A stretch of 64,000 bases of DNA from Lepidodermella squamata (Eukaryota; Animalia; Gastrotricha), in NCBI GenBank assembly GCA_047495785.1, contig JBLDXI010000017.1:2542001-2606000 (forward strand), read 5' to 3'. Below are positions 5,171 to 64,000 of the stretch, one piece after another. Numbering within the stretch: the stretch's first letter is position 1; each line of letters opens with the position of its first letter. A model generated the notes under the pieces. It was given only the letters and a program-made list of their open reading frames with translations. It searched no databases and was not told where the DNA came from. The position numbers were made by a program, and so were the translations under genes.

Positions 5171-5183
5171 GTTGCTAAGCAAC
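5171..5183. promoter_or_regulatory. RFX X-box upstream of the dynein heavy chain gene
   Basis: GTTGCTAAGCAAC near-palindrome ~230 nt before the dynein ATG (5411); X-boxes typify ciliary gene promoters. Confidence 0.7.
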
Positions 5184-5410
5184 GTTATACCGCCCCTCGT
5201 TCGAAAATCCGGGCTGGCCTTCCGTTTTAGGCAGAGGTCAGCTGTTTTCCCAGTTCTAGCTGTCCTGCTCCCTTCTTGATAACTTTATCCAGGACTGTAT
5301 GTGACTTTGTTATTTTGGGTTTTGGCCTATGAAAATCTATTCTCCATTGATGCATACATATTTTGATGAGGATGGACTGATCTTTGAGAATTAATTACTT
5401 AGCCTGGATC

Positions 5411-33342: not shown

Positions 33343-36300
33343 TCACCGTCTCGCTAGATTATGAGTTTCATACTGTAGCCACTGATCTGGAACTTCGAGA
33401 AAAAAATTGCGCATCGCATTGATGAAGCGATCACGATATTGATTTGGCGCAACGATGGTGGGTGTACCCTGTCTGCCCAGGAGACCGCTTGATTTTACCA
33501 CGGATTCGACCTTCTTATCCCAAGTGAAAGTTCGCAAGTAGTCGATGATGCCAATCACTATTCCATGGCCTTGGGGATCGAGACCTACAAGAAGGCTGTA
33601 GTCCATAACCTTGTTGTCAGCTAGAAATTGAGTGTCGGAAGCTATTGCTTGAAGCAGAAGTTTCTTAGAATGCGGATACACGTAAAGAGGGTCTTGCAGG
33701 CTCCGAATCAGAAGGTTTTCGTCCAGCAGTACGATGTCGCCATGTTCTGGCGTGGTGTCAGTGAATTCCTGCGCCGGCTCAGACAAGTCACCGTTGGATA
33801 GGGCGATCAAAGACGATGAGCTGCTCCCACTTGGAGGTTTTGTAGAAGGCCCAACATTTTTTACCAAGCGGTTACGCTGCGATCCTTTCAGGTCGAACTT
33901 CTCCGAAATGACGTAGTTCCGGAACAGATATTCCATGATAATAACATCGTACTTGAAACTATGGCCACTGATATTGCTTTCAACACCTATGTGGAAGACG
34001 CCAAAGATAGGAACTAGCGCAGAAGGTCTCTGAAAAACCTCAATTAATGATTTCAAGTCTAATAGTAGTTTTATTACCTTTTTGTCTCTCGATTCTTTGA
34101 CGTGCTCAAGGTATGCGGGAGCCATATCGAAAACGGTCTGAAGTTCCGTTTTTTGCAGCTGTTTAAGAACAAATCTTCGATCCAAGGTTCTGAAGTACTT
34201 GACGCCCGACTTGCCACCAGCTGCAAGCCATGACTTGCAACGGCGCAGCGATTGGACGAACCCAAACTCATTGAATAAGTCCTCATTGCTATCGGCTGAT
34301 GGCAGGAGAATAGCACGGATTTCGGCGAAGACCGCCGCATGGTAAGCAGTGACCGTGAATTTAGTCCCAGACTCCTTATCTAACGATGCATTGCACCACT
34401 CGACGGTAATGTGACGAGGGTCGTCTCTGATTTCCTGTTTCTTCCCACTATAACGTGGAGATTTCATGGGAGGTCTTAAATAAGCTCCTCCGACTCTGAG
34501 CTCAACTTTGGGCGAATCAGGTGGCTCCAACGAGCTGTTACCATCTTCAGCTGTAGCTACAGAGGGCGGCTGCGAATTAGCTTGGCTGTCGATTAGGGCC
34601 TTGTCAAAATCGAAGTTGATCACGCTGCTGGAATCAGAACTGCCATCAGATTCATTCATTTCAGCCTCCTCAGCGCATTCGGCTAACACGCGATTATCAC
34701 TAGACCTCTTCGACGCATGGCTTTCATTCGGCAATTCCGGCTGATTCACTGATAACGAAGCCGATCTACTGAGTAAGCCAAAGCTACTCATCGATATTGT
34801 TGACCCATCGCCCAGTTGGTCTGACAACTTTTGCTGATACTGTTCGGTTGAGAGGAAGAATGCGATTAGTGAACTGGGCTCTTCGTTGATAACTGCTACA
34901 GGGCTAACAAGCTGCTGGCTTCGAAATACGTAATGATGACCCGCTGGGAATGGCTGCTCAAGCGGTAATTTCAGTTTGCTCTTGAACAAAGGATGTTGCA
35001 GCATGTCTGCGTCGGTCAGAAATTCAAGAAGACCTCGAGCAAATGAAGTTCGATGCTCCATTCGCTTACTAGAAGGCGTATCTGGTGGATGGTTTCTCGA
35101 ATCTGGCGGTGGCATAGCTAGTTGGGGGGTGAAGACATCACTGGCATAGCTGGATACCAAATCAGATGACATCGCCTGGTTAGAAGTTATGTTCGGGCTA
35201 GTGTTAAGAGATGCGCTAGGAATCGGTCGAATGGCAATGGGGATCGATACTTTCCCGTCACCTGACGAGCTAAGATGAGGCTCGCTTGCTGCAGATACAG
35301 CCTCAGCACGGATGAAGTGAATGAACGCTTTCAGTGTTTCGTTCCAGTCGAACCAAGATTGATAGATATTTTGACACAGCGCCAAACCTGCATCTTCGCA
35401 GTCACGATTCGTCGACACGGATGCTGCCAGTTCAAGCTGGTTAACTTTTTCTACAAAATTCCCAACTTCGATAGTCAAATCATTTTCAAGAACCGCGAAC
35501 TGTTCCACTATCGATTTACTCGGAGTCCCAGGTAGCAGAGCATGCAGATTGTTCTTCAGATTTTCAAGATATAGAGCCACAGCGTCATAGTAAGAAGTCG
35601 CAATTTTGACCATAGTTGCCCCGTCTGGAGTCTGGGTCAGGAGCCGGTGTTGGAAATTACTGGCGCTCGTCGTTTTCAAATCAGCTAATTGCGGCTTAGG
35701 AATAACGATGTCCAAAACATCGATAGGTGAATACTTGAAGACAGCAACGATTTTTTCTTTAGCGAAGAACTGTAAATAGTTCTTTTCGAAAGAATGGGGG
35801 CAGCGCCTTGAACCAGTGAGCGTAACACATGTGTGATCGATTCCGTCGAATTTGCGCTGCAAGAAGCAGGCGAAAGACATTTCCCAAAGTGCATTCGGGT
35901 CCGGCCGATGCAGCGGTGTAACGGCGTTACATTGGCGGCACATGGACCACATGACAACAGCGTCATGAGGAGCAGAAATAGGTTGGGAAATCGCTCTTAC
36001 AATAACATCGACTCGACCGCAGTTACTAGCGAATCTGCGGACATGATCCGTATTAGCCGCTCCACATCCAGGACGCGAGCAGATAATACTCGGCATGAAG
36101 CAGATTTCGTCCAGAAATGCTCCGAGGCTATGATCAGGTGGCGTGTAAAGTGACCAAGATTCTGACGAAGGGCCGTAGCAAAAATGGTATGGGGAAGTGT
36201 GCGAATCAGGCGAAAAAACACTGACAAGGACCTGTAAACTCTGGCATTCTGCAAAGGACAATGGTTTCGCCCAGATTGCCTTAGAAATCCTTGGGTTTTT

Positions 36301-39117
36301 CGTCGTCACGCTTAGCGACACATTTTCTGACAACGTTGCTGTTAGTTTTCGAGATTTATCCTCGATTTCATAAAGCGATCCATCGCGCTTGAAGTCAGCA
36401 ATCATCCTGGCGAATTCCTCCGATTTGAGCTCGTGGACAAGTGGCGTTTTGAAGAAATCGTGAATTGGACGCTCAATGCTTACAGACGTCCAAAGCGGTG
36501 GCTTTGAATCGCAAGTCTCAGGCCGATTTCCCTGGTTGTAGCTCGCAGTCAGTAATGAGAAAATTGACGACTCGAAGTAAATGCGAGAGGGGCTGGCGTC
36601 GAACGATGCGGATTTTTTCGATGGATCTGGGAAACGTATCAAAGGGCATAATGCTAGTAGCCCTGAATTCGTGAGAGTAAACGCCGCATCTATCGTGGTC
36701 ATCGAAGTCCGTCGCTGCGATGAAACAGGCAAGGAAGGAGTTATCATCTGAGCTGCGGATCCCAGCGCAAGTTTCCGCCGATGCCGAATAAGCTGCACCA
36801 AGTTGAACGCTGCCGAGTCTCGATGGCCAGAGAAAGACCTTCGGCTTGCGATTATCTGCCGGCGATTGATGGCAGCCGTATTTGGGTACTCGTCCTCGTC
36901 AGGAGACAAGACATTCGGGTCATCGGAGGGTGACTTCGGGGAGGAAACCCAGGCGACTTCGAGCGAAAAGGGGTCAGCTCGAAATGCCGCCATGTACCGT
37001 GACATGACTTGGCCGTCATGGGCGACTGCAATTAGCCATCGAAGAATTTTCTTCACCTTAACTAGGTCGGAATAGCAGCTGTCCCGGATTAGAAGGGTAC
37101 ATCCTATTGGATCACAGCCCGACAGGCAGATGAAAGTTCTTTGAAGGCGAGTATGCTCATGGATGCAAAATGAAGCGAAAGTTCGGCAATTGCCGAGTCG
37201 TGCAGAGGATTGGCTGACACTTGACAACGTCAAACTGTCCACGGATTGGAATATCATGGCACCGGTGCATCGTGAAATCGCCTCCAGCAAGTGCGGCTTT
37301 ACGTAGGAAGCAGCTGAAATGTCATTAGCCAGCAAATTTTTACACGCAAGAGTTGGTATGGACCCTCCACACAGCACCAAAGTTGGTTTGAGGATCGCAA
37401 TCTGCGACACGTAGCGCTGCATTTGTTCGTATTCTTGGTCGACAACGATATCCAGGGTCGTTAGCTGTTCCGACTCCCGTTCAAATTCTAACCCACTTTC
37501 CAGTAAAAGAATTCGCGGCTTATGAATCGAACGTTTCATTAAGCGATGGCTCAGCGTTTTGGTGAAAACTAGGCCGTCAACGTACTCGAATTGAGCGGTC
37601 AAGTTCGGTTCGTAAATTTTCTTTATCTTAACGCACCGTCTTATGTCCAACATATCCGGGTAGTCGTGAGGTCGAGGCTTGAGGTTGCGAGCGACTTGAT
37701 AGACAATTTGCAGCATGTTCCGCTGCCATTTTTCAGCATCCAGCTGCTCGACGGAGAGCAAATGGGAGCAAAGGCGGGCGAGATGTACCTTGTACAACCG
37801 CTGGAGAGTTTTTTCAACATCAGACGCTCGGTAAATTCCGGAAATTATGTCGGACGGAGTTTGCCGGCCTAAAAGTTGCGACAAGCTTTTCAAGATAGCC
37901 TGATCGATTTCTTTTGTCAACTGCTGGCCAACTGCTTTGTTGCTAACTACTTGTTTTGATCCAGAGAAACTGCTTAGGTTTTCGAAAATTTGCTCCGAAT
38001 TTTGACGCTTGAAACTGCCAAGCGCCTCTTTTGGATTCTCGGGAATAGCCGAAATGTCCACGTCTTTCAATGACAGGGGCGTAGGAGGCGGCGTTGCTGA
38101 GTAAGACCCAATCACAGGTTTGAATTCAGGGGCAGAGGCAGCCGAATATCTCTCAGAATCGTCGAGTGGAATAGATGATGGTGGAATCGCTTTCCGTGTT
38201 GGCGATGACACTTCTGGCATGAAATTTGGAGTTTCGCTGCGGTTTGAATGAGTTAAATGCAGTGGTGATAGTGGCGAAGTAGTGCCAAGCGTTTGAGTGG
38301 GCGACTGATCTGAACTTCCCCCGATTGCAACGTACAGCGAGGCCAGACGCTGCAGAACATCTTCGGCTATCAGAGTGGCGTGCTCTTCCAAGAGAACGCG
38401 CAGTGTCTGTCGGTAACAAACCTCACACGCTCGCAAGCCATCTATAAACAAAACGGAAAAATGTCAACAGGGAAGTGAGGAAAAGCTAGGACAATAATGA
38501 ATCCACCCTAAAATGTCTAATTATAAAAATTGCTTACAATCGACACCGAACGGCTGGCCAGGTATGCGCCACCTGGTACACGAATCACAGAAGATCCGGC
38601 CGCAAAATCGGCAATGATGGCGGCGGGTGAAAGTCGTGAACCGAACGGAACAATCATAGCAGTGGTAACAGGTATCATCACTAGCCCAAATAGCGTTCAG
38701 GCCAATAATAGGGGTGAGCTGCTGTCCTTTACGCACGAACAGCGACGTGAACTGTTGACGATAAGTCGGTGATCTTGTTCGTGACGAGAGCGAATCAAGT
38801 TCAGCACTACTAGCAGGCTGGGAAATCGCTACCGATTGACTGCGTTTGACCGGTTGCTTGTCGCTAGATGCCACCGCCTCATTTTGCAGCACTGTCGCTG
38901 ATGACGAGCTAGGTACCAGTGTATTTTCCCTTCTCCGAAAGGCTTGACTAACGCTTGAAAAAATGCTATCGAAAAAGAGTGATGCTGTTGTATTGCGCTG
39001 CCTCGAATCCGGCTCGTTTCTCGGGTGGGGCCCGAATGATGTCAACGTATTCGGATCGAAACTAATTGGTGGCAAGGGAAGCGGTTTAGCCTCATCAGCC
39101 TCCTCACCAATCATCAT
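33343..39117 (-). CDS. PIKFYVE: PI3P 5-kinase PIKfyve/Fab1, copy 1 (~1,876 aa, no recognisable DEP domain)
   Basis: Exons 39117-38538, 38441-34078, 34029-33343. FYVE (WASDD..RRHHCRFCG), CCT/TCP1-like domain, Cys-rich region and kinase motifs GGKSG, VLKQ, DLKGS, MDYSLL, IIDYLR. Confidence 0.93.
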
Positions 39118-50552: not shown

Positions 50553-51749
50553 TTATTGCTCACAAGATGCCAATTTCAAAAGCTTTTTACTTTTGCTTTC
50601 AGGAGTGTAATGACCACTTCGTCGCAACTTTTCTACTATGGCGACGGGAGATAGACGCAAAGTATCGTCGGTATCAGCATCGTCAGTAATGTCAACAGAC
50701 TGAGACCAGTGAACACCGAAAGGTCGCAGTTCGTAGAGCATGTATTCATAAATATACATTTCATCAATACTCATCTAAAAATATCACATAAAAACAGGTT
50801 TTAAGGAGGATAGTTGAAATTATACGTAGTGGAAAGACACAGCGGAATCGGAGCAACACTCTGGACCTTCAGTGTAGCCACCTGCATCAAAGGACCACGC
50901 CCAATTGTTCGAATCCAACGAGCCAATCGGAATGTGATCCAGCAATCGAAGTGGCATGAAACGTTGCCGGCCATTCTTGTCTCGCGTATCTATAGCCTTA
51001 GCACCTACGCCATCTAGGCAATATCCGATTTGAACGTCTTCGGGGCCTCCGTTCGTTCGAATATTGCAATATTTGGGAATGTTGTACCCCTCACTCACCA
51101 TGCGGTTAAGGGCATTTCGTGACATGGCGTAACCAGCACCGCCACTCATATAGCCTTGCTTCACATAAGGGCGGAATAAGCGACCCAGATAAAATGGCTT
51201 ATTAGGGTTGTAGTCACTCAGTAGTAGTCGAAGGTTCTCCATTATCACGTACGTATCATCGTCAGCTTTCAAAAACCAGTCAAAATCCGATAGATGGTTG
51301 TCGTAGGCCCATTTGAAACCCGCTCGTACTTTACCCCATACTTCTTCATAACCAATTTGCGAAGACATTTTAATCGCTCCAATTTCCGGATCATCTATAT
51401 CAGACATAAAGACTAGCTGTGTGCATCGGCGTCCCCATGTTGAGCGAACAGCCATGATTCGGTCCCTGCGCGATGCTGTCGTTAACACAAGACACAAAAC
51501 TCGAACGGATGTTGACAAAAGGTCAACTAATTCATTGTTTTCCACATCTAATAATGGCTGATGAGGCTGTTTTAAAGGTTTCTGCAAACGCCGTTCGCCG
51601 AAGAATAATAGCGAAAATATTCCATATTCAGAATCTATCCAATACAGTAGTAGATATAGTGTCCATATGTAGTATAAAGTCGCGAAACCAGAAAGACATA
51701 AAAGACCCGCTGCGGCTATTGGGTGTCGATTCTTCAAGTTAAAAAACAT
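50553..51749 (-). CDS. Core 1 beta-1,3-galactosyltransferase (T-synthase)-like A1, catalytic motifs intact (~381 aa)
   Basis: Exons 51749-50826 and 50774-50553. Type II TM, TWGRRC, WFLKADDDTY, GYMSGGAGY, EDV, CCSD..VSFHY. Confidence 0.92.
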
Positions 51750-51799
51750 TTAAATATGCATCTATAAAATGAAAAATAACGAATAAATTCGCGCAATTT

Positions 51800-52917
51800 T
51801 TACTCAGCCTGGATGACATCTGACGAGTTAAAATGCTGTTGATGACAGGCAGGATATAATTGCTTGGATCCTCCATCATCTATCAAGTAACCTGACTTGC
51901 GGAGCCGGGAGACAAAGCTTGAAGGCGACAATGTCAGTAGATCATTGCTTGTGGTAGCTTCGATCGGAGAAACCCAGTAAACACCGAAAGGCCGAACTCG
52001 GTATAGGAGGTAGTGGAAAATTTGCATGTCTAAATTGTTGACCTGAAAAGGTTCGGGATAAACACAGGAAAATTATTATAAAATTACTGCAATCTTACGC
52101 CTTGAATAGAAATTAATCTTTTCGATCCATTCATTGGAACTCGAAGAATAGGCATTAGCCATTTGCCCACCTCGTCCACAGTTAGGTTGATTGCCTGAAT
52201 GTTGGGAGAAAGAACTCGGAGACACGTTGTAATCTGTGCTGTCTCGTACGGCTGATTAGATGGTTGCGCCCAAGGACATGAACCCGACATTGGGAACGAT
52301 TCAATCGCCAGTCGGGACAGCGCTTTCCGAGACAAAGCGTACCCACTTTCAGCAAGCAAGAACGAGTTCGAATCTATCCTACCCGCGTAATTCGTTTCGT
52401 TGGCGTTGTAGTGAGCCAATGCCAATCGCCAGTTATCCAACACCTGAAACGTGTTGTCCTCCGCTCTCAGAAACCAGTCGTAGTCGTTCAAATGATTGTC
52501 ATGCGCCCACTTGTACGCAGCTTTCAGTCTGACCCAAGTATCAGCGTTGGTCGCTTGCATATTCGGCGGGACGATGGCGCCCAGCTCTGCATCCTCCACA
52601 TCAGAGATGAAAACGAGTTTATTGCACCGAGGTCCCCAGGTTCGCTTGACTTGCAGCGCGTCGCTTTTATGACGCTCAGATTTTGTCACCACCAAGCACA
52701 TGATGCGAACTGAGCTGAACATGAATTTAACGAGATCATTGTCGCGTATAGGCACCACGTAATTCAGTTTAAAGCGCTTTATTGGTCCAGGGGGAGGCCC
52801 CCAAGCGTATCTGAACTGAGCGACGAGGAAATAATAGAAGAGGTAAATGCTGAAATAGATCAATACGGCGGTAACGATATTCTTTCGGTAACATCTTAGG
52901 CTGACAGTTAAGGCCAT
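51800..52917 (-). CDS. T-synthase-like paralog B1 with degenerate active site (~353 aa)
   Basis: Exons 52917-52099 and 52042-51800, intron at the same position as in A copies. TWGPRC kept, but DDD>EDN, GGAGY>AESGY, EDV>ETA, SFHY>SIQG. Confidence 0.88.
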
Positions 52918-53742
52918 TGTGGCAGACTTGTCCACACGTTTGCCTGTGATTTCCTAATAGAAGTCAGGTAAAATCCATCTAAAAATATTATTAGTAAGCA
53001 ATTGCAAATATTTTTTTTAGCAAATTAAAAAAATCAGTTTTGCATTAATAGTACTAGAAAAGCGCGGTATATTCTGTATTCGGTTGTAGCAGAGACATAA
53101 GTGAAGAACTTACTATTTTCCATACAAATGCAGAAAGTTCAAGTATATGAAATGTAGTTTACTGTCTTGTTGCGAGCATTGGCGCCGTTGAAACAAAGAA
53201 AAGGTCGAGCACTGGAAATGAACATGACTTTGCGGCACTGACTCGTCGCTATATACTAATAACATAGACAATGATGTAACATTATTGTCTATGACTAATA
53301 AACAATGGATAACCAACGTACGTATACGGATAATATGGCTAATTTGAAATTTGTGTGACCACTCATGGCAACTGAACTTGATATACATAATTGAAATATT
53401 TGTAGCAACTATTTCGTTTGAAGAACTTTTTTTGGTGTATAGGCACTAGGCATTTCATCTACTACTGTGTTTTACAGCTGTATGATGCGATTACGCCGCT
53501 CCACGAAATCCTTCGATGGTGGGGCTTATCCGCGTGTGATATATCTTGTATTGAACTGTAAACGAGTGAAGCCCTATTGGGTTGTAGTGTAACGGGCATT
53601 TCAGCGCTATACTCATGAAATTCTAAAATAACTATTTTCGCCGGTGGCGGCACGGGTTTCAGAAAGCTCATAAAATAAGCAATTCGAATGTCCTCTTATC
53701 ATGATCAGCAAATTAATTTGTATTTATTGAAAATGAGCTTAT

Positions 53743-54942
53743 TCAAATACAAGACGTTGAATTCAAAAATAATTCAGTCTTGTCATCAGGGGTATAATGA
53801 CCGCTACGTCGCAATTTTTCCACCAGTTTCGACGGCGATAAATTAGACGTAGAGTTGCCAACAATTTCACTCAAGTTCTCATCAGTTTGAGACCAGTGCG
53901 CACCGAACGGTCGAAGTTGGTACAGCAAGTATTCGAAAAGGTACATTTGCTGAGGGGTTACCTGAAAATAAGGACAATATAGAGATAGACTAAATTATAT
54001 AGGAAAGCTTAGTTCGAGAATTACGTAATGGAAAGAAACAGCATAGTCCGAACAGCAATCTGGACCCTCAACAAAACTGGTGTCGTAACTCCATATCCCG
54101 TTGTTTGAATCCAATCCGCCAATAGGTAACGTCTCCTTTAATCGAAACGGCAAGAACCGCTGTCTTTTAAAGCTGTCCAAAGTTTCAATGGCTCGAACGC
54201 CAACTCCTTCAAGACAAGTTCCAACATGGACATCTTCGGAACCTGAAGTTGTTCGCATGTTACAATACTTTGGAATTTTGTAACCCTCATTCACCATGCG
54301 GTAAAGGGCATTTCGCGATATTGCGTAACCAGCACCACCGCTCATGTAGCCCTGATTAACATAATGACGGAATAGGTGACCCAAATAAACCGGAGAATTA
54401 GGATTGTAATCACTAAGCAGCAGGCGTAAATTTTCCATTATCACAAACGTATCGTCGTCAGTTTTCAAAAACCAGTCAAAATCTGATAGATGGTTGTCGA
54501 AGGCCCATTTGAAACCCGCTCGTACTTTGGTCCATACTTCGCCATACCCAGCTTCCTGGGATACAGGAATCGCACCGAGCTCTGCATCATATTCATCAGA
54601 CATGAAAACTAGTTTGTTACATCGGCGGCCCCATGTTGCCTTGATAGATTTTGATTTAAGTTTGCGCGAGGACGTCGTCAGAACCAAGCATAGCACTTTT
54701 ACAGATGAAGCCATTAGATCGACCAATTGATTATCATCCGAATAAACCGGCATCTGAACCTTTGCCAAGGCTGCTTGGCTTCCGAAGTTGACGAAGTATG
54801 AGCGTGAGAATATGCCATATTCTGTATCAAACCAATATCCAACCAAGAATAATGTCCATAGACAATAAACTGAAGCGATTAGATAAAGTAAAGTCAGTCC
54901 AATAACAGCTAAAGGATGCCGATTTTTACATGGAACAATCAT
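53743..54942 (-). CDS. T-synthase-like A2, catalytic motifs intact (~378 aa)
   Basis: Exons 54942-54025 and 53961-53743. WFLKTDDDTF, GYMSGGAGY, EDV, CCSD..VSFHY. Confidence 0.92.
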
Positions 54943-55021
54943 AAAACCTATGATTTTTCAACGAAATGGTACACAAATTCAGAATTGATTGCTTCGCTCT
55001 AAATTAAACCACGTGACATTT

Positions 55022-56137
55022 TCACCTCCAAGTTGAGTTCAGAATTCGATTATGGCAAGTAGGAAAAAGATTTTTAGTGACTTTTGCGTCATATCCAGAC
55101 TTCTCCAGTAGGCGAATAATGTTTCTTGGAGACAATGTCAACAAGTTGGAACTATCTGCGGCTTCCTTTGACGGAACCCAGAGAGCCCCGAAAGGCCGTA
55201 CTCGGTACAGTAAATAGTGATAGATTTGCATGTCAGTGTTGTCCACCTAGTAAACATCGTCAATGAAGCATTCAACTTTTAGAAGCCAAAATCTTACGCT
55301 GTAAATTGATACGGCCCTTTTCGACCAAAAAAGCGGCACGTTCTGTGTTGCCCATTCGTTCGCGGTGTGGGCAATTGGCATAAGTTCTTTGTTGTCTTCG
55401 TCTAAGGTAATGTTGATAGCTCGAAGATCGGGCGATAAAGACCGTAGGCAAGTTGACATTTCAGCCGTTTCATAGGGCTGTTGGACGCTTTGCGCCCAAG
55501 GACATAAACCCGCCATCGGGAACGCTTCAATTGCAAGTCGGGACAGCGCTTTTCGCGACAAAGCGTACCCACTTTCAACAAGCAACAACGAGTTCGAATC
55601 TATCCTGCCCGCGTAAATCGTTTCGTTGGCGTTGTAACGAGCCAAAGCCAAGCGCCAGTTTTCCAACACCTGGAACGTGTTGTCCTCCGCTCTCAGAAAC
55701 CAGTCGTAGTCGTTCAAATGATTGTCGTGCGCCCACTTGAACGCAGCTTTCAGTCGGACCCATGAGTCAGCGTTGGTCGACTGCATATTTGGCGGGACGA
55801 TGGCGCCCAGCTCGGCGTCCTCCACATCGGAGATGAAAACCAATTTATTGCACCGAGGTCCCCAGGTTCGCTTGACTTGCAGCGCGTCGCTTTTATGACG
55901 CTCAGATTTTGTCACCACCAAGCACATGATGCGAACTGAGCTGAACATGAATTTAACGAGATCATTGTCGCGTATAGGCACAACGTAACTCGCATTGACC
56001 CGGCGAACTGGAACTGGCGGTGGCTGCCAAAACTCAAATTCGAATTGCACCTTGATGAAGTAATAATGAAGATAGACGCTCAAATATATTATTAGTGCAA
56101 CTGCCATGATTCGATAATACGACTTGAGGTTTGCCAT
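55022..56137 (-). CDS. T-synthase-like paralog B2 with degenerate active site (~354 aa)
   Basis: Exons 56137-55298 and 55246-55022. WFLRAEDNTF, VESGY, ETA, SIYS. Confidence 0.88.
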
Positions 56138-56677
56138 CTGAAAACTACCAGACTCTAAGAAATCATTCTCGTCTAGGAACTTTTTGTTTCCATTAGGTAT
56201 CGGCGCATTGTTCACTGGAAACTAGATCAGTAGCCACATTGTTATATAAGTATTTTACTTGCGGAACTCAGTCGGCCATTTCGCCAACTACTACGAAGTC
56301 GCAGTGCATTTGACAGTCATAAGGCTGCCAATCTATTCAAGTTGATATAGTCTCGTCGCTACGAAAACAATTCCCGTGTCTTGTGAACAATGGCGGGTAA
56401 AATGCTGCACATCATCTTACTAAAAGACAGCGACGATTACACGAAAACAGCTGCTGTTTTTTATTATTCTCTTTATTTTCTCCTTCTAGCAAGCAAATTC
56501 ATTTGTTCAAATATTCAATGGCCCAGTCACCGCTGTTTTTTCAAGCTTTTATTTCACAATTACAACTCTTCAAGCATCATAATAAAAGTATTCGTTGAAA
56601 GACTATTATATCGATAGAGCGATAAAACAAAGAAAAATATGGAATCGATTTAATTCAAATAATCGGTGTCTCAACTT

Positions 56678-59600
56678 CTAGCTCTGGGATGCAAGTCTCA
56701 GGTTGTGGGTTTCGTACGCTAGCCAGTGATCCGGAACCTCTAGGAAGAAGTGCCGCATAGCCGAGAGGAATCTATCGCGGTACTTGCCGGGGTAAAGAAT
56801 AGTCGGCGCTTTGCCCTGCCCGCCGAGCAGGCCCGTTGTCTTGACAATATACTCCAGTTTTTTGTCGAAAGTAAACGTTCGAAGGTAGTCGATGATGCCG
56901 ACGACAATAACCTGCCGTTCTGCGTCGATTCCGACCAGCAGCGAGTAGTCCATCACTGAGTTACGCGCCAAAAACTGCGTGTCGGCTGCAATTGCCTGCA
57001 GCAATAGCTGTTTCGAGTGAGGATGCACGTAGAGGGGATCTTGAAGGCTTCCTATGAATATTTAAAAAAATTAAATTTGAATTTGAAATTTGAAATTTTG
57101 AATTTTTTTAAATATTTTGAAAATTCCTCCTTAAATTTGTAGAGAAAATACTAACGGATGAGGAGATTCTCGTCCATCAAAACCATTTCATAGGGCTGCC
57201 TTTCAGGTGTAGCTTCCGAGGCCTCGGCGTCAGCAGACGGCGTTTGTTGGTGCTGTTTAACGAAGCGGTTTCTTTCGGAGCCTTTCAAATCGAATTTGTC
57301 CGAAATTGTGTAGCACCTGAACAGATCAGTCATAACTATCAAGTCGAATTTCGACGATCGGCCAGTCACTCCGTTATCGAATGATACGTTGAAGGCTCCC
57401 AAAATAGGCACAAGGGCCGAGGGTCTCTATAAATAAAAATTAAAAATCCGCCTTAAAATAATAGCTCTTCTTACGTTTTGTTCGCGAGCTGATCGTATCA
57501 TAGCCGCATATTCAGGGGCGAGTTTGAAAATTGTTTTCAGCTCGTCCTTCGAGACCTGTTTCAAAAGCAGCCGGCCGTCTGTTGTCTTGAAAAACCGAAG
57601 CCCTGATTTCCCGCCAGCCGCAACCCAGGAAATACACCGAGCAAGCGAACGCAGGAAGGACGTTTCCAACCAGTCCCTTACGTCGCTCTCTTCCTGATCT
57701 GCTTTTTCCACGAGAATGGAACGAATTTCAGCAAAAATAGCCGCATGGTAGATGGTGACCGAAAATTTGGTGACGCTTTCTTTACCGACATTAGCATCGG
57801 TCCACGAAATTTTGATGTGAGGATCAATTTCAAGATTCGTCAACTGAGCCTGTGATTGAACTTCTCGAGCCGGTGAATCAGGTTTTATGTTCAAAGGCTG
57901 AGGGGTCAAGTGTCGCGGCGACGGTGTGTTTGTGTTCGAGGCGAAATTTGGCACAGTCGCGCTCGCCTTTGGCTTCGATTTACGCGACAACTGCGGCGAA
58001 GATTGAGCCGAAGAAGGTCGGCTGCCTGACCGTGATCTCGGGGCGATAAAGCGAGCCGAGTCTAAAATTGGCCGTCGGCTTGCGAATTTCGGCCTTACAC
58101 CGCGCAAGGAAATCGTGTCAACAGGGTCAACGGTCGAGCCGAATTCAATCGCACTCGCGTCGTCCTCTGCTTCATCGTCATTAGCCATATTCAAGTTCAT
58201 TGCACTGGCACTTCTAGCACTTAACGTCATCTCCCTAGACCGCGATGGATCATCATTGTCGCTTTCTTCCCCGCTTGAATCTCGAATAATATCAGTCGAA
58301 TCCACATCCATCGCCTGTTTTTCACTAGCGACAGGCGTAGTAGGTTGGTTGGACGCAAATTCCGCCAGCCGGTTCATCAGCGGTAATGAAGGTCGATCAG
58401 GTAACGGAGAACCTATAGCTCGCAGCTGTTTCAACTTCTGGTTGTATTCATCGGTTGACAGGGCGAATGCAATGATAGAACTCGGCTCGTTGTCATAAAC
58501 AGCGACCGGAAATAGGTAAGTTTGGCCTCGAAAAACGTAGTGATAAGTCGGGTCAAACGGAGCTTTCAGCGGCAATTTCAGCTTCGTTTTGAAAATTGGT
58601 TGTTTAAACACCTCAGAATCGGTCAGAAACTCTAGAACCTGTTTACCGATGTGTTTACTCGCGGTTACTGAAGATGCGACCGGCGGCTGCGTTGGCTGAT
58701 TTTGGACCGGGACTGGCAGAGTTTGCATAGCTGCATTAGACGAAACCCGGCCCAGTAAATTGTGCTGCGATTTTTCTGGGGTGTTTTCGGTCAAAACTGG
58801 ATCTTTCGTATCACTCAGGCCTAGGCCAGATTGTTCAATAATCGGTGCGCCGATGGGTATAGGCGAGGTCGGGCCGACGAAAGAAGTCGATAAATAAGTA
58901 GAAGATGGACCCTCAGAGTCGTTGCTTAAAACCGTTGACGATGATTGAGTTCGGAGGAATCGAACCAAATTTTTAAGCCGTTCGTTCCAATCCAGCCACG
59001 ATTGGCTTACATGCTGAAACAGCTCGAACGCGATTTGCTCCGTAGTTCGGACTATCGTCGAGTTGGACGGCCGTTCCCACGCCTGATCAGTCATCGCCAA
59101 GTCCAACGCAGCCATATTCGTAATGAATAATTTTCGCTCGTCCGCCAGGTGTTCCTCTGAATGGGTCATCAAATCTATGGCAGGTTGGGAAATCGAACAA
59201 CCGGGTGAAATCATAAGGTTGTTTTTGCAATTTTCCAAATACATTTGAACCACATCGAGATGCGACAATATCGCTTGGGTCAGTAACTCGTGATCTTTCA
59301 TCAGGGCCGCATGACGGTCTTTGAATTCCAGCGGCAATGTCGGTTCAAGAGAAATAGTTGGCGGGGGAATTACGAGGTCGTGGACGTTGATGTTGGAATA
59401 TTTGACCACAGCGACCAGGCTGTTTTTCGCGAAAAATTGTAAATAATCTTTCACGAAAGAGTGCGAACAAGCCGGGCCTTCTTGCGTGGCTGGCGAGACT
59501 TTGAAGTCGATGCCATAGAATTTCAGGTGCAAATAACATGCCAGGGACATGCCCCAAACGTCTTCGCTAACTTCAGCGAACGGCGTAATTGTTCGACACG

Positions 59601-62600
59601 TTCGACACATGGACCAAGTAATCAACGCATCGGATGAGAATTCGTTCGAAACTTCGCTGTCCTGAGAAACTTCACTCGCACGAGGATTCGCAAGGGCCAG
59701 AATTGAGAGAATAGGTTCGGCGAGGGGGCGCACAACGATTTCGACCCTGCCGTAATTCGAAGCGAAACGGCGCACGTGGTCGACTAATGGAGCCCCGCAG
59801 CCTCTACGTGGGCATATCGTCGTTGGTACGAAGCACTGATTCTCCAAAAACGCACCTAAACTCAAGTCGGAAGGCGCGTGGTAAGGGCATGATACCAATC
59901 GCGGGCCGTCGCAATGCCGATAAGGCGATAATTGGGAGTCGAGCGAGAACGTGCTAGTCAGCACGTGCAGGTATTGGCACTCAAAAATCGACAATGGTTT
60001 CACCCAGGCGCCGCATTTTCTCTCCGAAACAGTTAAATTTCGGCTTTCGGCTTTATTTTCGTCATCCGAAATGTCGAACAAAAAGCCTTGCCGGCGAAAT
60101 TGCGCGAGCAAGGTTTGAACTTGCAACGACTTCAAATCACCAATCAGCGGCGTCGTGAAAAATTTATCGTACGGTTTCGGCACTGATTTTGACACCCACA
60201 TCGGCGGAGATGGGTTTGGAATAGCCAATGGCTGTTTACCAGCTAAATAGCTAGCACTGAATATCGTGAATAACGTAGACTCAAAGTAAATTCTCGATTG
60301 ACTAGCCTCGAAGAGGGCTGATTTTTTCATCGGGTCTGGAAGTTTGATCAAAGGGCTGAGAGATAGTAACCCAGAATTCGCCAAGGTGAAAGCAGCCTCT
60401 AAAGTAGAGTTGCTTTTCAAGGAGGCGGTCGATAAATCAAGGGCTGCCAGAGTTGATGCGCTGGTTTGATGCGACTTTTTCGCTGGGCCGTTTCTCGATG
60501 CAGATTTCGACCGTTTCGACGAGCCTCCGATTCCACTTTGACGTCTCCGGCCAGTCGAAGCGACAGGTTTATTGTCTTCGTCGTCAAAGTAGACGCGACC
60601 AGCGAATTTATCTGTTACGCTATTGTAGGGTGGCGGCAAATCGAACGAAGCCGGATCAGCTCGAGCCGCTAGAAGGTACTGCGATAGCACCAGGCCGTCA
60701 TACGCAACCAAAATCAATTGCTTCAAGATTCGTTTGACCTTGATCAAATCGCTGTAATTGCTGTCTCGAACTAGCAGGGTGCAACCGATCGGGTCGCATC
60801 CGGATAGGCAGAGGAAGGTTTTCTGAAGGCGGGTGTGTAGATGAACGGAGAAGGAAGCGAAAGTACGGCAAGTTCCAAGTCTGAACGAAGACTGCTGTCC
60901 TGAGCTGAGTAGTGAAAGACTATCCACGGTGGAAACGATCGTGGCTCCAGTATATCTCGAAATTTGTTCAAGAATGCGAGGTTTCACGAAAGACGCGGCT
61001 ACAATATCATTGGCTAGCAACAATTTATTAGCCACAGTTGGAATACTGCCGCCACAAAACAGAACTGTTGGTTTTGTACTGACAATTTGCGAGACATTTC
61101 TCTGCATTTGCTCGGTTTCCTGCGGTCCGAAATCAGATTAAAAATTGAAATAAAATCGAAGTAAAATGAGCAAACCTGATGGACAAGAACGTCAAGCGTT
61201 GTCAATTGCTGCGAGTCGCGTTCAAAATCGAGTCCGGTTTGCAGCAATAAAAACCGAGGATTATAGAGCGAAGTCCGCATGCCTCGATGGGACAAGCTTT
61301 TCGTGAAAACCAGCCCGTCTACGTACTCAAAATGCGCCGATAAACTAGAGTCATATATTTTCTTAATTTTCACGCAACGCCTGATATCGAGGGCATCCGG
61401 GTAAGATCGAGGATGCGGTTTGACGATTCGCACGACTTGATAGACGATTTGCAGCAGATTTCGTTGCCACTTCTCCGCGTCAAGTTCGTCGACTGCGAGC
61501 AGGTCAGCGCAAATTCGTGCCAGATGAACTTTATACAGCCTCCTTAAGCTGGCATCTACATCTGTAGCGCGATAAGGCAGAACTTCACTCGGACGCTCTT
61601 TAATCATGAAATTTTTCTGAAGACTCTCGCCAACTGCTGCGTCGACTTGAACATTCATTTGGTTGGTTTTTGTCGCAGTTGCAACAGTAGCAACTCCGAA
61701 AGATGAAGTCCGAGGAAGGTCTTTCGATGAAACAGACGAAGTATTGCGTCTAACACCGGCGGGTGGCGGCTGAAGTTGCATTCTCGACGTTGAGCTGCTA
61801 CCTCTCGACGGTTTGTTTTCAGGCGCATTTTGGTCTGTAGCGATTGGGACGAACCCAGCGGATCTTCCGGGTCGATAATAGGAGGCTAGGGCAAAAACTT
61901 CCCGATTCGTCGATCGTTGTAGAGGTGCAATTATTCCTAGGTCCAGCATAGCTTTTGATATAGCGGCAGCTTGGAAACTGTTCAATTCTTGATCCCTGGT
62001 CATCAGCCATTTCAGTAAGCTTTCGCCGGAGAAACAATGATAGAAAGTTTTCGCCAACGACCTGCGTGTTTCGAACTTCAAACCATTCGGCTGGAATGCT
62101 GATTCGAAAATTCGCTTCAAGTTTGCGAACTGAGGCAAAGCTTCGATGTTTCCACGTGATTCCACGTGGTTCTGGTTGAAGTCATCCTCATCGCCACTTC
62201 CGTATGAATTATCGACTGTTATTTCGTCCAGTGTCATTCTACGATCAACCAGCCGCCTTAACGGATCAAGAATCACACCACTCGAGTCATCAATTATAGA
62301 GGTCGAGTTAGACGGACTTAGAGGTACTATGCTCGTATATGCAGGCGAGTGAGGGACAGCTGCATCGTTGGATATTCTAGGCGAAGGAGCGATTCGGCTC
62401 AAACTTCGATTTAATGCATTGCCTGAAGATCCGGCATTAGAGCTCTGAATATTTTGCACCGAAGACGATGTTTGCATCTGCGTTTGATAAGGCTGATTAG
62501 CCGTCATAGCTGCTCCGGCAACCGTTGCATAGAGAGACGCAATTTTTTGAAGCATTTCGTCAGATAAAGATTCGTAATGCGTTTCTAACAGACTTTTCAG

Positions 62601-63245
62601 CGTATCACGATAGCACACCTCACAGGACCTAAGACCCTCTGAAAAAAATTAACTGAAGATAACTTCATTTATTCGATAGTAGAAGCTACCTCTCGCTCCG
62701 AAGGGTTGCCCTGGAATTCGAAAACTCGAACAAGAATCACAGAAAATTCTGCCACAGAACCGGCAATGATGTCTGCGAAGGAATGTAGTGAACTTCATGG
62801 AGCAGGCATAACAGTGGCGACACGCATCGTCGCTGGCCCATTTCGCATTCAAACCAATCGAAACTGGCGGGTTTTTACCGAAAATCGAAAGGAATTTCTT
62901 CGGTGCCTGGCCTGCGTGAGGATTCGATGCAGTTGGCGCCTGTGAAATGCTGCTAATATCAGAGCTGCTAATAATACTTCCCGTCGGTTCATGACTTGGA
63001 TCGGCATCTGCTTGGGTAGGCTGATTTTTTGTCGCTGAATTCGGAGCTGACAATGGGTCTGATTTTTTCGATGAATCATCACCGCGCCGAAATGCAGAAG
63101 CGACCGCCCCAAATAGTGAGCCTAGCCGGGATGATGAATGCGTATCTGCTTCATCGGGATTTGGAGGAGGCGCGCCAAATGACGTAAACGTATTGGGATC
63201 GAAGTCTACTTCTTGTAACGAAGGTTGCGTATTGGACTGCTTCAT
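56678..63245 (-). CDS. PIKFYVE: PIKfyve/Fab1, copy 2 (~2,102 aa, with DEP domain)
   Basis: Exons 63245-62690, 62638-61176, 61119-57475, 57426-57156, 57051-56678. FYVE, DEP-like (TFYHCFSGESLLKWLM..AAAISKAMLDLGII), CCT-like and intact kinase motifs. Confidence 0.93.
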
Positions 63246-63417
63246 CAAATAAACAAAAAATCTACAAAAAAACGCGATTTTAGAACGATTGTATAATGCA
63301 TATATCGTCAGATAAATAATTTTGAGCTTGTGATCAGAAAGCGCCAACATTAGAGTGAAATAGTTAAAATGATAGAAAAATACCGCATCCATGAAAATAC
63401 CAAGATCTCATGTAAAA

Positions 63418-64000
63418 TTAATGTTCCAAAGATGTAGAAGAAACTAATGTTTTTAAATGTGCCGAAACATCGCGCAGCACTTTGTTTGATGACTGCAAAG
63501 ACACGTTGTAGCCGTGATTTCGCATTACTTTGATAAGGCTAAAAGGCGATAATTTTAGCAGGTTTTTGTGTCCATCAGCAGCGTCAAGTTCCTCCCAATA
63601 TTGGCCGTAAGGCCTCGCTCGATACAATAAATAATCCATCACGTACATCTCCTCGGGAGTGGTCTATAAAAATTATCGACAATAACAAAAATTATCCACA
63701 ACATGGATAAAAATTACGTAATGAAAAGATATAGCCGCATCAGAACAACAGCCCGGTCCTTCGGTGTAATTGAATCGATCATGCCCCCATACCCAGTAAT
63801 CTTTCTTCAGACGGCCGATTATCAGATGATCCAAAGGTTTCAGGGGCATGAAGGTATTTCTGCCCAGCGAATCCCGAGTGTCCACCAAGGTGGCTTTAGA
63901 GAACTCGTAGGCTCTGCCCAGCTCAACATCCTCAAGAGCAGACTCCAGCCAGGCCGAATACGACTGCTTATAGCCAACGTCGATCATTTCGTACAAAGCT
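63418..64000 (-). CDS. 3' part of a third T-synthase-like gene A3 (cut by the window end)
   Basis: Exons >64000-63718 and 63663-63418. EDVELG, DTRDSLGR, CCSDAAISFHY, MYVMDYLLY. Confidence 0.85.

What the first reader, a model, noticed from the sequence alone, without database searches (positions are those of the whole stretch)
50553..56137. Duplicated enzyme/pseudoenzyme pairs: T-synthase preceded by a Cosmc-like inactive paralog
Transcription order is B2-A2-B1-A1. A copies keep DDD, GGAGY, EDV and SFHY. B copies are full-length with intact ORF, TM anchor and shared intron, yet have lost the DxD motif, the putative catalytic base and the metal-binding His. Vertebrate T-synthase needs the inactive homolog Cosmc (C1GALT1C1) as a private chaperone, whereas fly and nematode enzymes do not. 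A dead paralog tightly linked to, and co-duplicated with, each enzyme suggests an independently evolved chaperone or regulatory subunit for O-glycosylation.
Basis: partly seen in the sequence, partly recalled or inferred. Interest (0 to 1): 0.85.

Follow-up and report, generated by a model that had tools for sequence, protein, structure and literature searches.

The report
Dead-enzyme partners beside sugar-transferase genes
An invertebrate genome carries two tandem pairs of genes, each an intact-looking O-glycan galactosyltransferase preceded by a transcribed, selectively maintained copy that has lost its catalytic residues, which may be a home-grown helper subunit like the vertebrate chaperone Cosmc, though that role is untested.

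Summary
Four two-exon, type II membrane GT31 genes lie on the minus strand in the order B2-A2-B1-A1. All share a phase-0 intron at one aligned position. A1 and A2 keep DDD, the Gly loop, the ED catalytic base and the C-terminal His. B1 and B2 have E-D-N, no Gly loop, Asp to Thr at the base, His to Gln or Tyr, and a roughly 22-residue deletion that removes acceptor-binding residues and the Cys-Cys pair.

B is not decaying. Its ORFs are intact, probable cDNA contigs cover B1 and B2 (the B2 intron is seen spliced out), and dN/dS is about 0.2. It also has a gene-conversion tract and a confident GT-A model.

Trees place B inside a lineage-specific clade with A0 (a fifth copy at 63418-64000), A1 and A2 (support 100/99). 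B therefore arose locally and is not a Cosmc orthologue, although no Cosmc sequence could be put in the tree.

New points: B stops only 50 and 79 nt before the A start codons, and similar degenerate copies sit beside active ones in a mayfly and a tapeworm.

The chaperone or subunit role is plausible but unproven. A's identity as the true T-synthase is also unproven. The scan flagged a similar DxD-less paralogue 1.8 Mb away in this genome.

The parts
50553..51749 (-). A1: C1GALT1-like glycosyltransferase gene. Exon 1 is 50826-51749, the intron 50775-50825, and exon 2 50553-50774. The protein is 381 aa and all four GT-A landmarks are intact.
   Evidence: Gene model. Pfam Fringe 6e-19. 7q4i match 4.7e-70. 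Landmarks. The splice is seen as loose ends in X1.
51750..51799 (-). A 50-nt spacer between the B1 stop codon and the A1 ATG. It contains a 3' splice-acceptor-like tract (ttttcattttatag) 12 nt before the ATG and no AATAAA. The spacing looks operon-like.
   Evidence: Sequence read directly. Co-transcription is inference only.
51800..52917 (-). B1: catalytically degenerate paralogue. Exon 1 is 52099-52917, the intron 52043-52098, and exon 2 51800-52042. The protein is 353 aa.
   Evidence: Gene model. Pfam Fringe 1.8e-5. 7q4i match 1.1e-33. Landmarks lost. X1 contigs lie on its unique exon 2.
52290..52760 (-). Gene-conversion tract shared with B2 (55516-55986). It includes a 138-nt perfect run at 52618-52755, matching 55844-55981.
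   Evidence: Ungapped identity profile with a sharp edge at 52760. Synonymous differences are 0 in codons 61-90. Repeat family D1.
53743..54942 (-). A2: C1GALT1-like glycosyltransferase gene. Exon 1 is 54025-54942, the intron 53962-54024, and exon 2 53743-53961. The protein is 378 aa and the landmarks are intact. AATAAA lies about 20 nt after the stop.
   Evidence: Gene model. Pfam. The X1 joint skips exactly these 63 nt.
54943..55021 (-). A 79-nt spacer between the B2 stop codon and the A2 ATG.
   Evidence: Sequence read directly.
55022..56137 (-). B2: catalytically degenerate paralogue. Exon 1 is 55298-56137, the intron 55247-55297, and exon 2 55022-55246. The protein is 354 aa.
   Evidence: Gene model. 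The X1 joint skips exactly these 51 nt. AF2 model of exon 1: pLDDT 85.3. Top Foldseek hit 7q4i.
63418..64000 (-). A0: 3' part of a fifth, A-type copy. It keeps EDV, CC and SFHY, and has the same phase-0 intron (63664-63717). It runs off the window end and lies just upstream of a PIKfyve/Fab1 gene.
   Evidence: tblastn. ORFs. Splice model. The same order, A-like gene then FYVE gene, is found in ENA contig L001.

Best explanation
B1 and B2 are pseudo-glycosyltransferases. They are type II membrane proteins that keep the GT-A fold of a C1GALT1-like enzyme but have lost donor binding, metal binding, the catalytic base and the acceptor loops.

They arose by duplication of a lineage-specific A-type gene, changed rapidly, and have since been held under purifying selection. 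The B-A cassette was then duplicated.

The most likely function (inferred, not shown) is a non-catalytic partner of the A enzyme encoded 50-79 nt downstream. C1GalT1 is an obligate homodimer. B keeps best the parts that include named interface elements: the N-terminal alpha1/beta1 region and the alpha9 Tyr. B would therefore pair with A in the ER or Golgi, either transiently like Cosmc or stably like CHPF with CHSY. In that role it would control A's folding, stability, localisation or specificity.

Shown: the anatomy, loss of the catalytic residues, expression and splicing, selective constraint, local origin, and fold.

Inferred: catalytic inactivity, co-expression with A, physical pairing, and the direction of any effect.
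For: Catalytic apparatus gone. Relative to DmC1GalT1 residues (PMC9065035):
- D181/D183 become E/N.
- The Gly loop SGGAG becomes LAES or LVES.
- The base D255 becomes T (D255A is inactive in the paper).
- H324/Y325 become Q/G or Y/S.
- The UDP contacts E150, G151, R152, L155 and K158 are all changed.
- Y218/S220 are changed, and W300/Y304 and the CC pair are deleted.

Maintained by selection:
- B1/B2 dN/dS is 0.22. Inside the conversion tract pN is about 0.04 against pS about 0.25. In the saturated flanks pN is 0.2-0.36 against pS 0.66-0.97.
- The B stem branch is 2.15 substitutions per site, but the tips are only 0.21-0.23, shorter than the A tips at 0.39-0.43.

Expressed. Run X1 behaves as cDNA:
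- No depth in the 825-nt spacer.
- Introns of A2 and B2 removed at the predicted GT..AG sites.
- A SMART-oligo loose end.
- Contigs lie on B1-specific exon 2.

Fold kept:
- AF2 pLDDT 85.3, pTM 0.76.
- Foldseek top hit 7q4i (E 2e-19), followed by chains of the CHSY3-CHPF heterodimer.

Scaffold preferentially kept. B retains 17 of 21 family-invariant residues in the N-terminal alpha1-beta2 region (A retains 13-14). B retains only 13-14 of 33 and 10-12 of 34 in the two catalytic segments (A retains 27-29 and 24-26). The interface residues named in the paper are Met and Tyr in B (Leu95 and Tyr336 in the fly enzyme).

Linkage:
- B stop to A ATG is 50 and 79 nt, against 825 nt between the two pairs.
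- A1+A2 and B1+B2 are sister pairs.

Analogy:
- Degenerate copies next to or fused with active ones occur in Neocloeon, Hydatigera, Drosophila kikkawai, Patella and Glandiceps. In the trees the Neocloeon and Hydatigera degenerate copies group with their own local active copy; the D. kikkawai, Patella and Glandiceps ones are long branches that were not resolved.
- Language-model features put Cosmc clusters at ranks 2 and 4 for B1 but rank 12 for A1. This is a lead only.
Against: - No interaction, localisation or activity data exist.
- Multimer modelling was not available.
- Tight spacing is common in this compact genome (the A0 stop lies about 25 nt from the next ORF), so 50-79 nt does not prove co-transcription. 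No bridging or trans-spliced reads were seen.
- No B orthologue was found in 1.84 billion representative proteins, so conservation rests on two paralogues that also exchange sequence by gene conversion.
- The related ENA contig L001 has an A-type gene and no B-like match anywhere on its 11.4 kb, about 8.3 kb of it upstream of that gene. A-type enzymes can therefore apparently exist without B.
- The N-glycan argument is weak. A1 has no sequons, as mammalian T-synthase has none, but 17 of 172 active-looking homologues also have none.
- A itself lacks Glu150 and Arg152 and may not be a T-synthase.
Confidence: 0.45

Rival explanations
1. B is a maintained pseudoenzyme whose job does not involve A. 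It could be a glycan- or nucleotide-sugar-independent binding protein. It could be a decoy or inhibitor of other Golgi enzymes, as GnT1IP/MGAT4D is for MGAT1 (my own knowledge). It could also be a Golgi retention or scaffold factor.
For: B shows the same signs of constraint and loss of catalysis. No B partner is present near the A-type gene of the related contig L001. This genome reportedly carries another DxD-less paralogue in a different array. That fits a general expansion of the family with varied fates.
Against: The acceptor-binding loops are deleted, which argues against a lectin that reads GalNAc. The strict B-then-A pairing with 50-79 nt spacers, and the co-duplication of the pair, are not explained by this reading.
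Confidence: 0.25
2. B is still a transferase or hydrolase with an unorthodox, possibly metal-independent active site. It would use the retained Glu of the xED motif and the central Asp of E-D-N.
For: The Glu of xED and the middle Asp are kept in both copies. The fold is intact. Purifying selection is compatible with an enzyme.
Against: All five UDP contacts, the Gly loop, the C-terminal His/Tyr, the catalytic Asp and the acceptor residues are changed or deleted together. D255A alone kills the fly enzyme.
Confidence: 0.1
3. B belongs to an ancient metazoan C1GALT1C1 (Cosmc) lineage and is a true Cosmc orthologue. On this reading its grouping with A is an artefact.
For: PMC8022947 reports C1GALT1C1-like sequences in Hydra and amphioxus and proposes a pre-cnidarian split. 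No Cosmc sequence could be included in my trees. Language-model features of B resemble Cosmc clusters.
Against: The clade {A0, A1, A2, B1, B2, P0001-3} has 100/99 support. B's best BLAST hits are P0001, A2 and A1 at 33-40% identity, against about 31% for canonical enzymes. B shares the phase-0 intron of A0, A1 and A2, whereas the vertebrate Cosmc coding region is a single exon. The pattern of motif loss also differs, because DxD is deleted in Cosmc and substituted in B.
Confidence: 0.05
4. B copies are young or slowly decaying pseudogenes that merely remain open and are read through transcriptionally.
For: Loss of catalytic residues and a 22-residue deletion are what decay would also produce.
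Against: Two copies have been separated long enough for synonymous sites to be near saturation outside the conversion tract. Both still have intact 353-354-codon ORFs, conserved splice sites, an anchor, four Cys and dN/dS about 0.2. The AF2 model is confident.
Confidence: 0.03

Closest known systems
Cosmc (C1GALT1C1), the private ER chaperone of vertebrate T-synthase
   Same: Both are GT31 homologues of T-synthase with a type II anchor and a non-functional DxD. In Cosmc the N-terminal lumenal domain carries client binding (PMC5493369). In B the N-terminal half is the best-kept part.
   Different: B is not orthologous to Cosmc. It is nested in a lineage-specific clade with its neighbours. It has an intron, whereas the Cosmc coding region is single-exon. 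B is tandemly linked to its presumed client, whereas Cosmc is X-linked and unlinked. DxD is substituted in B rather than deleted. B has lost the Cys-Cys pair. No chaperone activity has been shown for B.
CHPF/CHPF2 with CHSY1/3 (chondroitin polymerase heterodimers, GT31-related)
   Same: An inactive paralogue with a modified DxD serves as a stable partner of an active paralogue (PMC8022947). These chains are the next-best structural matches to the B2 model after 7q4i.
   Different: They belong to a different GT31 subfamily and are two-domain proteins. Their partnership is demonstrated by cryo-EM, whereas B's is only inferred.
DmC1GalT1 / C1GALT1 (T-synthase), PDB 7Q4I
   Same: It is the closest solved relative of both A (4.7e-70) and B (1.1e-33). 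A keeps DxD, the Gly loop, Asp255, His324 and the three disulfides.
   Different: A has Ile or Ala for Glu150 and Tyr for Arg152, and sits outside the canonical C1GALT1 cluster. B lacks the whole active site.
Degenerate C1GALT1-like paralogues of other invertebrates (found here, apparently undescribed)
   Same: Copies lacking two or more landmarks lie next to or are fused with active ones. Neocloeon triangulifer XP_059488308 reads active-degenerate-active within an array of at least six units. Hydatigera taeniaeformis VDM17564 reads degenerate then active, each unit with its own anchor. D. kikkawai XP_017023825, Patella XP_050416904 and Glandiceps XP_077978998 look like two-domain models.
   Different: The origins look independent: in the trees the Neocloeon and Hydatigera degenerate copies group with their own local active copy, while the others are unresolved long branches. 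Some cases are gene-model fusions. None has been characterised. In none of them did I see the B-A unit duplicated as a cassette.

Membership tests
C1GALT1 / T-synthase (for A1, A2) | GT-A Fringe-type domain with DxD, Gly-rich loop, xED base (Asp255) and C-terminal His324 | tested here: met
   PF02434 at 6e-19 and 8e-15. KADDDT / KTDDDT, YMSGGAGY, PEDV / SEDV and SFHY.
C1GALT1 / T-synthase (for A1, A2) | UDP contacts Glu150 and Arg152 of the fly enzyme | tested here: not met
   Glu150 is Ile in A1 and Ala in A2. Arg152 is Tyr in both. These positions are E and R in 83% and 81% of 96 homologues.
C1GALT1 / T-synthase (for A1, A2) | Orthology with canonical bilaterian C1GALT1 | tested here: inconclusive
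   A falls in a separate, lineage-specific clade (100/99) outside the cluster of nematode, arthropod, mollusc and fish enzymes. The backbone of the tree is poorly supported.
C1GALT1 / T-synthase (for A1, A2) | UDP-Gal:GalNAc-alpha-Ser/Thr beta1,3-galactosyltransferase activity | not testable with these tools
   This needs an enzyme assay.
Cosmc / C1GALT1C1 (for B1, B2) | T-synthase homologue with a non-functional DxD and a type II membrane anchor | tested here: met
   RAEDNT replaces KADDDT. A single N-terminal hydrophobic segment has mean KD 1.9-2.2.
Cosmc / C1GALT1C1 (for B1, B2) | Orthology with vertebrate C1GALT1C1 | tested here: not met
   B is nested with A0, A1, A2 and P0001-3 at 100/99. 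Its best hits are local. It shares an intron with A, whereas the Cosmc coding region is single-exon. Caveat: no Cosmc sequence was available to put in the tree.
Cosmc / C1GALT1C1 (for B1, B2) | ER residence, direct binding of unfolded T-synthase, and requirement for active enzyme | not testable with these tools
   This needs localisation, co-IP and co-expression assays.
Non-catalytic GT partner subunit (CHPF-like pseudoenzyme) | Fold retained while catalytic residues are lost, under purifying selection | tested here: met
   AF2 pLDDT 85.3. Top Foldseek hit 7q4i. Landmarks lost. dN/dS 0.22.
Non-catalytic GT partner subunit (CHPF-like pseudoenzyme) | Physical complex with the active paralogue | not testable with these tools
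   Only monomer prediction was on offer. The two interface residues named in PMC9065035 are Met and Tyr in B (Leu95 and Tyr336 in the fly enzyme).

The most novel reading that the evidence does not exclude
A private helper subunit for a C1GALT1-family enzyme has evolved independently of vertebrate Cosmc. It is encoded immediately upstream of its client as an operon-like B-A cassette that was then duplicated. More generally, dimeric C1GALT1-type enzymes repeatedly spawn dead paralogues that stay linked, or even fused, as partner subunits across invertebrates (mayfly, cestode, fly, limpet, acorn worm). On this view Cosmc would be one instance of a recurrent evolutionary solution rather than a vertebrate oddity.
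Probability: 0.3. Interest if true: 0.75.

Novelty: new variant of a known kind. Interest (0 to 1): 0.55.

Why it matters
Why vertebrate T-synthase alone among Golgi glycosyltransferases needs a private, homologous chaperone is an old puzzle in glycobiology. The standard view is that invertebrate enzymes manage without one.

A second, independently derived dead paralogue sits next to its presumed client. It is kept by selection, and it best retains a region that includes elements named at the dimer interface. That gives a directly testable system: express A with and without B.

If the pairing is real, and the similar degenerate-plus-active arrangements in other invertebrates work the same way, enzyme plus pseudoenzyme heterodimers would be a general property of the C1GALT1 family. 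That would also bear on how Cosmc arose.

If A works alone, B is one more uncharacterised pseudo-glycosyltransferase in a family that expands freely.

Tried and rejected
1. Search for B orthologues. The word-indexed search and the exhaustive profile search of 1.84 billion representatives returned only A-like or unrelated degenerate proteins. No B family was found elsewhere.

2. Far outgroup P0133. This is an ENA protein with three repeats and a GDN/HDN motif. It was pulled onto the B branch in the first careful tree. BLAST shows only 26% identity and 67 bits, so I treated this as long-branch attraction and rebuilt the tree without it.

3. P0266. This degenerate protein from Logan data shares B-like features: the same 4-residue deletion, ES[GA]Y, and AEQSN. 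Its best hits are arthropod enzymes, so I took it as convergence and not as a B orthologue.

4. N-glycan argument. A1 has no sequons, like mammalian T-synthase, and B has four. However, 17 of 172 active-looking homologues also lack sequons. I kept this only as a weak hint.

5. Getting a Cosmc sequence. None is in the PDB and none is among the 400 fetched proteins. Typing one from memory was not acceptable, so Cosmc is absent from all trees.

6. Identifying the organism. The Rfam scan of the window found nothing. Acetyl-CoA synthetase gave best hits of 52-57% to spiralians and vertebrates alike. The organism remains an unidentified compact-genome bilaterian.

7. SMART-oligo loose end at 51814. 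Its orientation fits neither a 5' nor a 3' transcript end, so I used it only as a sign that X1 is cDNA.

8. Evidence for a bicistronic or trans-spliced B-A transcript. No bridging record was listed.

Full report
**Anatomy**

The minus strand of 50553-56137 holds four genes in the transcription order B2, A2, B1, A1. Each has two exons separated by a 51-63-nt GT..AG intron. The intron is phase 0 and lies at one aligned position, directly after SFHY in the A copies and after SIQG (B1) or SIYS (B2).

- The proteins are 381 aa (A1), 353 aa (B1), 378 aa (A2) and 354 aa (B2).
- Each starts with a short cytoplasmic tail and one hydrophobic segment, as a type II Golgi or ER protein would.
- All four match Pfam Fringe PF02434.
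- The closest solved structure for all is Drosophila C1GalT1, 7Q4I: A1 at 4.7e-70 and B1 at 1.1e-33.

A fifth, A-type copy (A0) was not in the finding. Its 3' part lies at 63418-64000 on the same strand and has the same intron (54 nt). It keeps EDV, CC and SFHY, and sits just upstream of a PIKfyve/Fab1 gene. An ENA metagenome contig, L001, encodes the closest outside relative, P0001 (55% identical to A1, intronless). That contig has the same order of an A-like gene followed by a FYVE gene, and no B-like match anywhere on its 11.4 kb, about 8.3 kb of it upstream of the A-like gene. A0 is therefore probably the ancestral position.

**Catalytic residues**

The structure paper for DmC1GalT1 defines the following (PMC9065035):
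- the DxD motif (Asp181, Asp183);
- the Gly-rich loop;
- the xED base Asp255 (D255A is inactive);
- the metal-binding His324 with Tyr325;
- the UDP contacts Glu150, Gly151, Arg152, Leu155 and Lys158;
- the acceptor contacts Tyr213, Tyr218, Ser220, Trp300 and Tyr304.

I read these positions from an HMM alignment of about 320 domains and from a 100-sequence MAFFT alignment.
- The A copies keep everything except Glu150 (Ile or Ala) and Arg152 (Tyr).
- The B copies have Glu-Asp-Asn for Asp-Asp-Asp, LAES or LVES for SGGAG, Thr for Asp255, and Gln-Gly or Tyr-Ser for His-Tyr.
- In B all five UDP contacts are changed and Tyr218/Ser220 are replaced.
- B also has a four-residue deletion before the Gly loop. 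A deletion of about 22 residues removes the Trp300/Tyr304 loop and the vicinal Cys-Cys.

Two of the three conserved disulfide pairs remain in B. By any canonical GT-A mechanism B should be inactive. That is an inference from sequence.

**B is maintained, not decaying**

Nei-Gojobori estimates:

| Pair | dS | dN | dN/dS |
|---|---|---|---|
| A1 vs A2 | 1.70 | 0.30 | 0.18 |
| B1 vs B2 | 0.92 | 0.20 | 0.22 |

The B comparison is a mosaic.
- A tract of about 470 nt (52290-52760 against 55516-55986) is roughly 91-95% identical.
- It contains a 138-nt perfect run and has a sharp edge at 52760. This is the mark of gene conversion.
- Inside the tract but outside the perfect run, synonymous differences outnumber non-synonymous ones about six-fold per site (pS about 0.25, pN about 0.04).
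- In the flanks synonymous sites are near saturation (pS 0.66-0.97), while pN is 0.2-0.36.

On the tree the B stem is long (2.15 substitutions per site), but the B tips are short (0.21-0.23 against 0.39-0.43 for A). This is a burst of change followed by constraint.

**Expression**

Of two public runs holding the stretch, X2 behaves as genomic DNA, with even depth and no joints at the introns. X1 behaves as cDNA:
- It has no depth over the 825-nt A2-B1 spacer or downstream of A1.
- Its contig joints remove exactly the 63-nt A2 intron and the 51-nt B2 intron.
- Its loose ends show the A1 exon-exon junction.
- One loose end is the SMART cDNA oligo (recognised from my own knowledge).
- It has contigs on the B1-specific exon 2.

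The tool itself labels X1 only as a guess at RNA. The spliced joints are what make the case. Contigs cannot give expression levels.

**Fold**

AlphaFold2 on B2 exon 1 with a 100-sequence alignment gave mean pLDDT 85.3 and pTM 0.76, with a Rossmann-like alternation of strands and helices. Foldseek ranks 7Q4I first (E 2e-19, TM 0.68). Next come both chains of the CHSY3-CHPF chondroitin polymerase heterodimer, an enzyme and pseudoenzyme pair of the same superfamily.

**What B has kept**

There are 118 columns in which at least 75% of 96 homologues share one residue. The counts of those residues retained are:

| Region | Columns | B1, B2 | A1, A2 |
|---|---|---|---|
| N-terminal alpha1-beta1-alpha2-beta2 | 21 | 17, 17 | 13, 14 |
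| DxD to Gly loop | 33 | 13, 14 | 29, 27 |
| xED to C-terminal His | 34 | 10, 12 | 26, 24 |

The exon-2 helix (MQIFHYLLYRVRPFG) is also well kept. The paper places alpha1 and alpha9 at the very large homodimer interface. It names Leu95 and Tyr336 there, and notes that the Cosmc-binding peptide of human T-synthase maps to alpha1/beta1. In B these two residues are Met and Tyr. Cosmc's own client-binding activity resides in its N-terminal domain (PMC5493369). This pattern is why I favour a partner-subunit role. It is a pattern, not a test.

**Origin**

- In the careful tree without the far outgroup, {A0, P0001, A1, A2, B1, B2, P0002, P0003} form a clade with 100/99 support. A1+A2 have 100/99 and B1+B2 have 100/100. 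The order inside the clade is unresolved.
- B1's best BLAST hits are P0001 (40%), A2 (37%) and A1 (33%), ahead of canonical enzymes at about 31%.
- Together with the shared intron, this says B arose from the local A-type lineage.
- The two sister pairs, with comparable synonymous saturation outside the conversion tract, fit a duplication of an ancestral B-A cassette.
- B is therefore not a Cosmc orthologue. The caveat is that no Cosmc sequence could be fetched with the tools, so none is in the tree.
- PMC8022947 states that the vertebrate Cosmc coding region is a single exon. It also reports C1GALT1C1-like sequences in Hydra and amphioxus.

**Linkage**

- The B1 stop is 50 nt from the A1 ATG, and the B2 stop is 79 nt from the A2 ATG. 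The A2 stop is 825 nt from the B1 ATG.
- Neither short spacer has AATAAA. Each has a polypyrimidine-AG acceptor-like site just before the A start codon.
- A2 has AATAAA about 20 nt after its stop.
- This looks like two bicistronic units, and another follow-up in this genome proposed trans-spliced operons.
- However, the genome is compact (the A0 stop is about 25 nt from the next ORF), and I saw no bridging or spliced-leader reads. Co-transcription is only a hypothesis.

**Recurrence elsewhere**

Screening the fetched homologues for the three key residues showed many degenerate C1GALT1-like domains. Several sit beside or are fused to active ones.
- The mayfly Neocloeon triangulifer has an array of at least six units with one degenerate unit that has its own anchor.
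- The cestode Hydatigera taeniaeformis has a degenerate unit followed by an active one, each with its own anchor.
- Drosophila kikkawai and D. rubida, Patella, and the acorn worm Glandiceps have gene models with a degenerate N-terminal domain, an active C-terminal domain and a single anchor or none.

In the trees the Neocloeon and Hydatigera degenerate copies group with their own active neighbour (support 98-100). The D. kikkawai, Patella and Glandiceps copies are very long branches that were not resolved. Where it could be tested, these are independent events. I found no paper describing this.

Language-model features place Cosmc clusters at ranks 2 and 4 for B1 but rank 12 for A1. That is a lead and no more.

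**Cautions about A**

The A clade stands apart from the canonical nematode, arthropod, mollusc and fish cluster, and lacks Glu150 and Arg152. Calling A "the T-synthase" goes beyond the evidence. It is an intact-looking C1GALT1-family transferase whose donor and acceptor are unknown, and a canonical orthologue may lie elsewhere in the genome. The scan also noted a DxD-less core-1-synthase paralogue in another array 1.8 Mb upstream. I could not inspect it.

**Verdict**

The following are shown:
- B is a locally derived and selectively maintained paralogue.
- B is transcribed and looks catalytically dead.
- B is tightly paired with, and duplicated together with, an active-looking enzyme.

A chaperone or subunit function is the best explanation at roughly 45%, and it is untested. 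In kind it is a new, independently evolved variant of the Cosmc/CHPF type of pseudo-glycosyltransferase. It is of moderate interest, and would rise to high interest if the A-B dependence is demonstrated and proves general.

Noticed in passing
window 33343-38451 (-) and 56678-63392 (-): There are two PIKfyve/Fab1-like genes in one window, each with PIP5K and Cpn60_TCP1 domains. The kinase gene next to the GT31 cluster therefore has a paralogue about 20 kb away, which suggests a segmental duplication.
   Followed up: partly
window 63393-63420: The A0 stop codon lies only about 25 nt upstream of the first ATG of the next ORF, which carries a FYVE-finger-like Cys-rich C-terminus. The order of an A-like gene followed by a FYVE gene, about 120 nt apart, is conserved in ENA contig L001.
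   Followed up: partly
window 53194-53389, and 53256-53296: In DNA run X2 this bin of the A2-B1 spacer has about five times the neighbouring depth (526 against about 110), so it is probably a repeated element. It is not repeated within the window. A 15-nt palindrome at 53263-53293 coincides with a 39-nt deletion variant in X2.
   Followed up: partly
window 51315-51408, 52307-52391, 54325-54379, 56142-56193: X2 shows clusters of alternative bases at about half depth inside A1, B1, A2 and upstream of B2. These could be a divergent second haplotype or collapsed paralogous copies.
   Followed up: no
window 51814: An X1 contig ends here and runs into the SMART cDNA oligo sequence. Its orientation fits neither a plain 5' nor a plain 3' transcript end.
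   Followed up: no
L003 (Neocloeon triangulifer JASKYO010000018.1) 3198-15782: A tandem array of at least six Fringe/C1GALT1-family units lies on one strand within 13 kb. RefSeq fuses three of them into one 1067-aa model, and the middle unit is catalytically degenerate.
   Followed up: partly
P0133 (ENA, 1304 aa): This protein has three tandem repeats of about 430 aa. Each repeat has a GT31-like domain with GDN or HDN in place of DxD, but with an intact Gly loop, ED and His. It probably comes from a protist and may represent an unusual metal-site variant.
   Followed up: no
window 28764-30743 (+): A 659-aa acetyl-CoA synthetase (ACSS1-like) is encoded as a single uninterrupted ORF. Its best hits are only 52-57% identical, to spiralians and vertebrates alike. 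No close relative of this organism is therefore present in the protein databases searched.
   Followed up: partly
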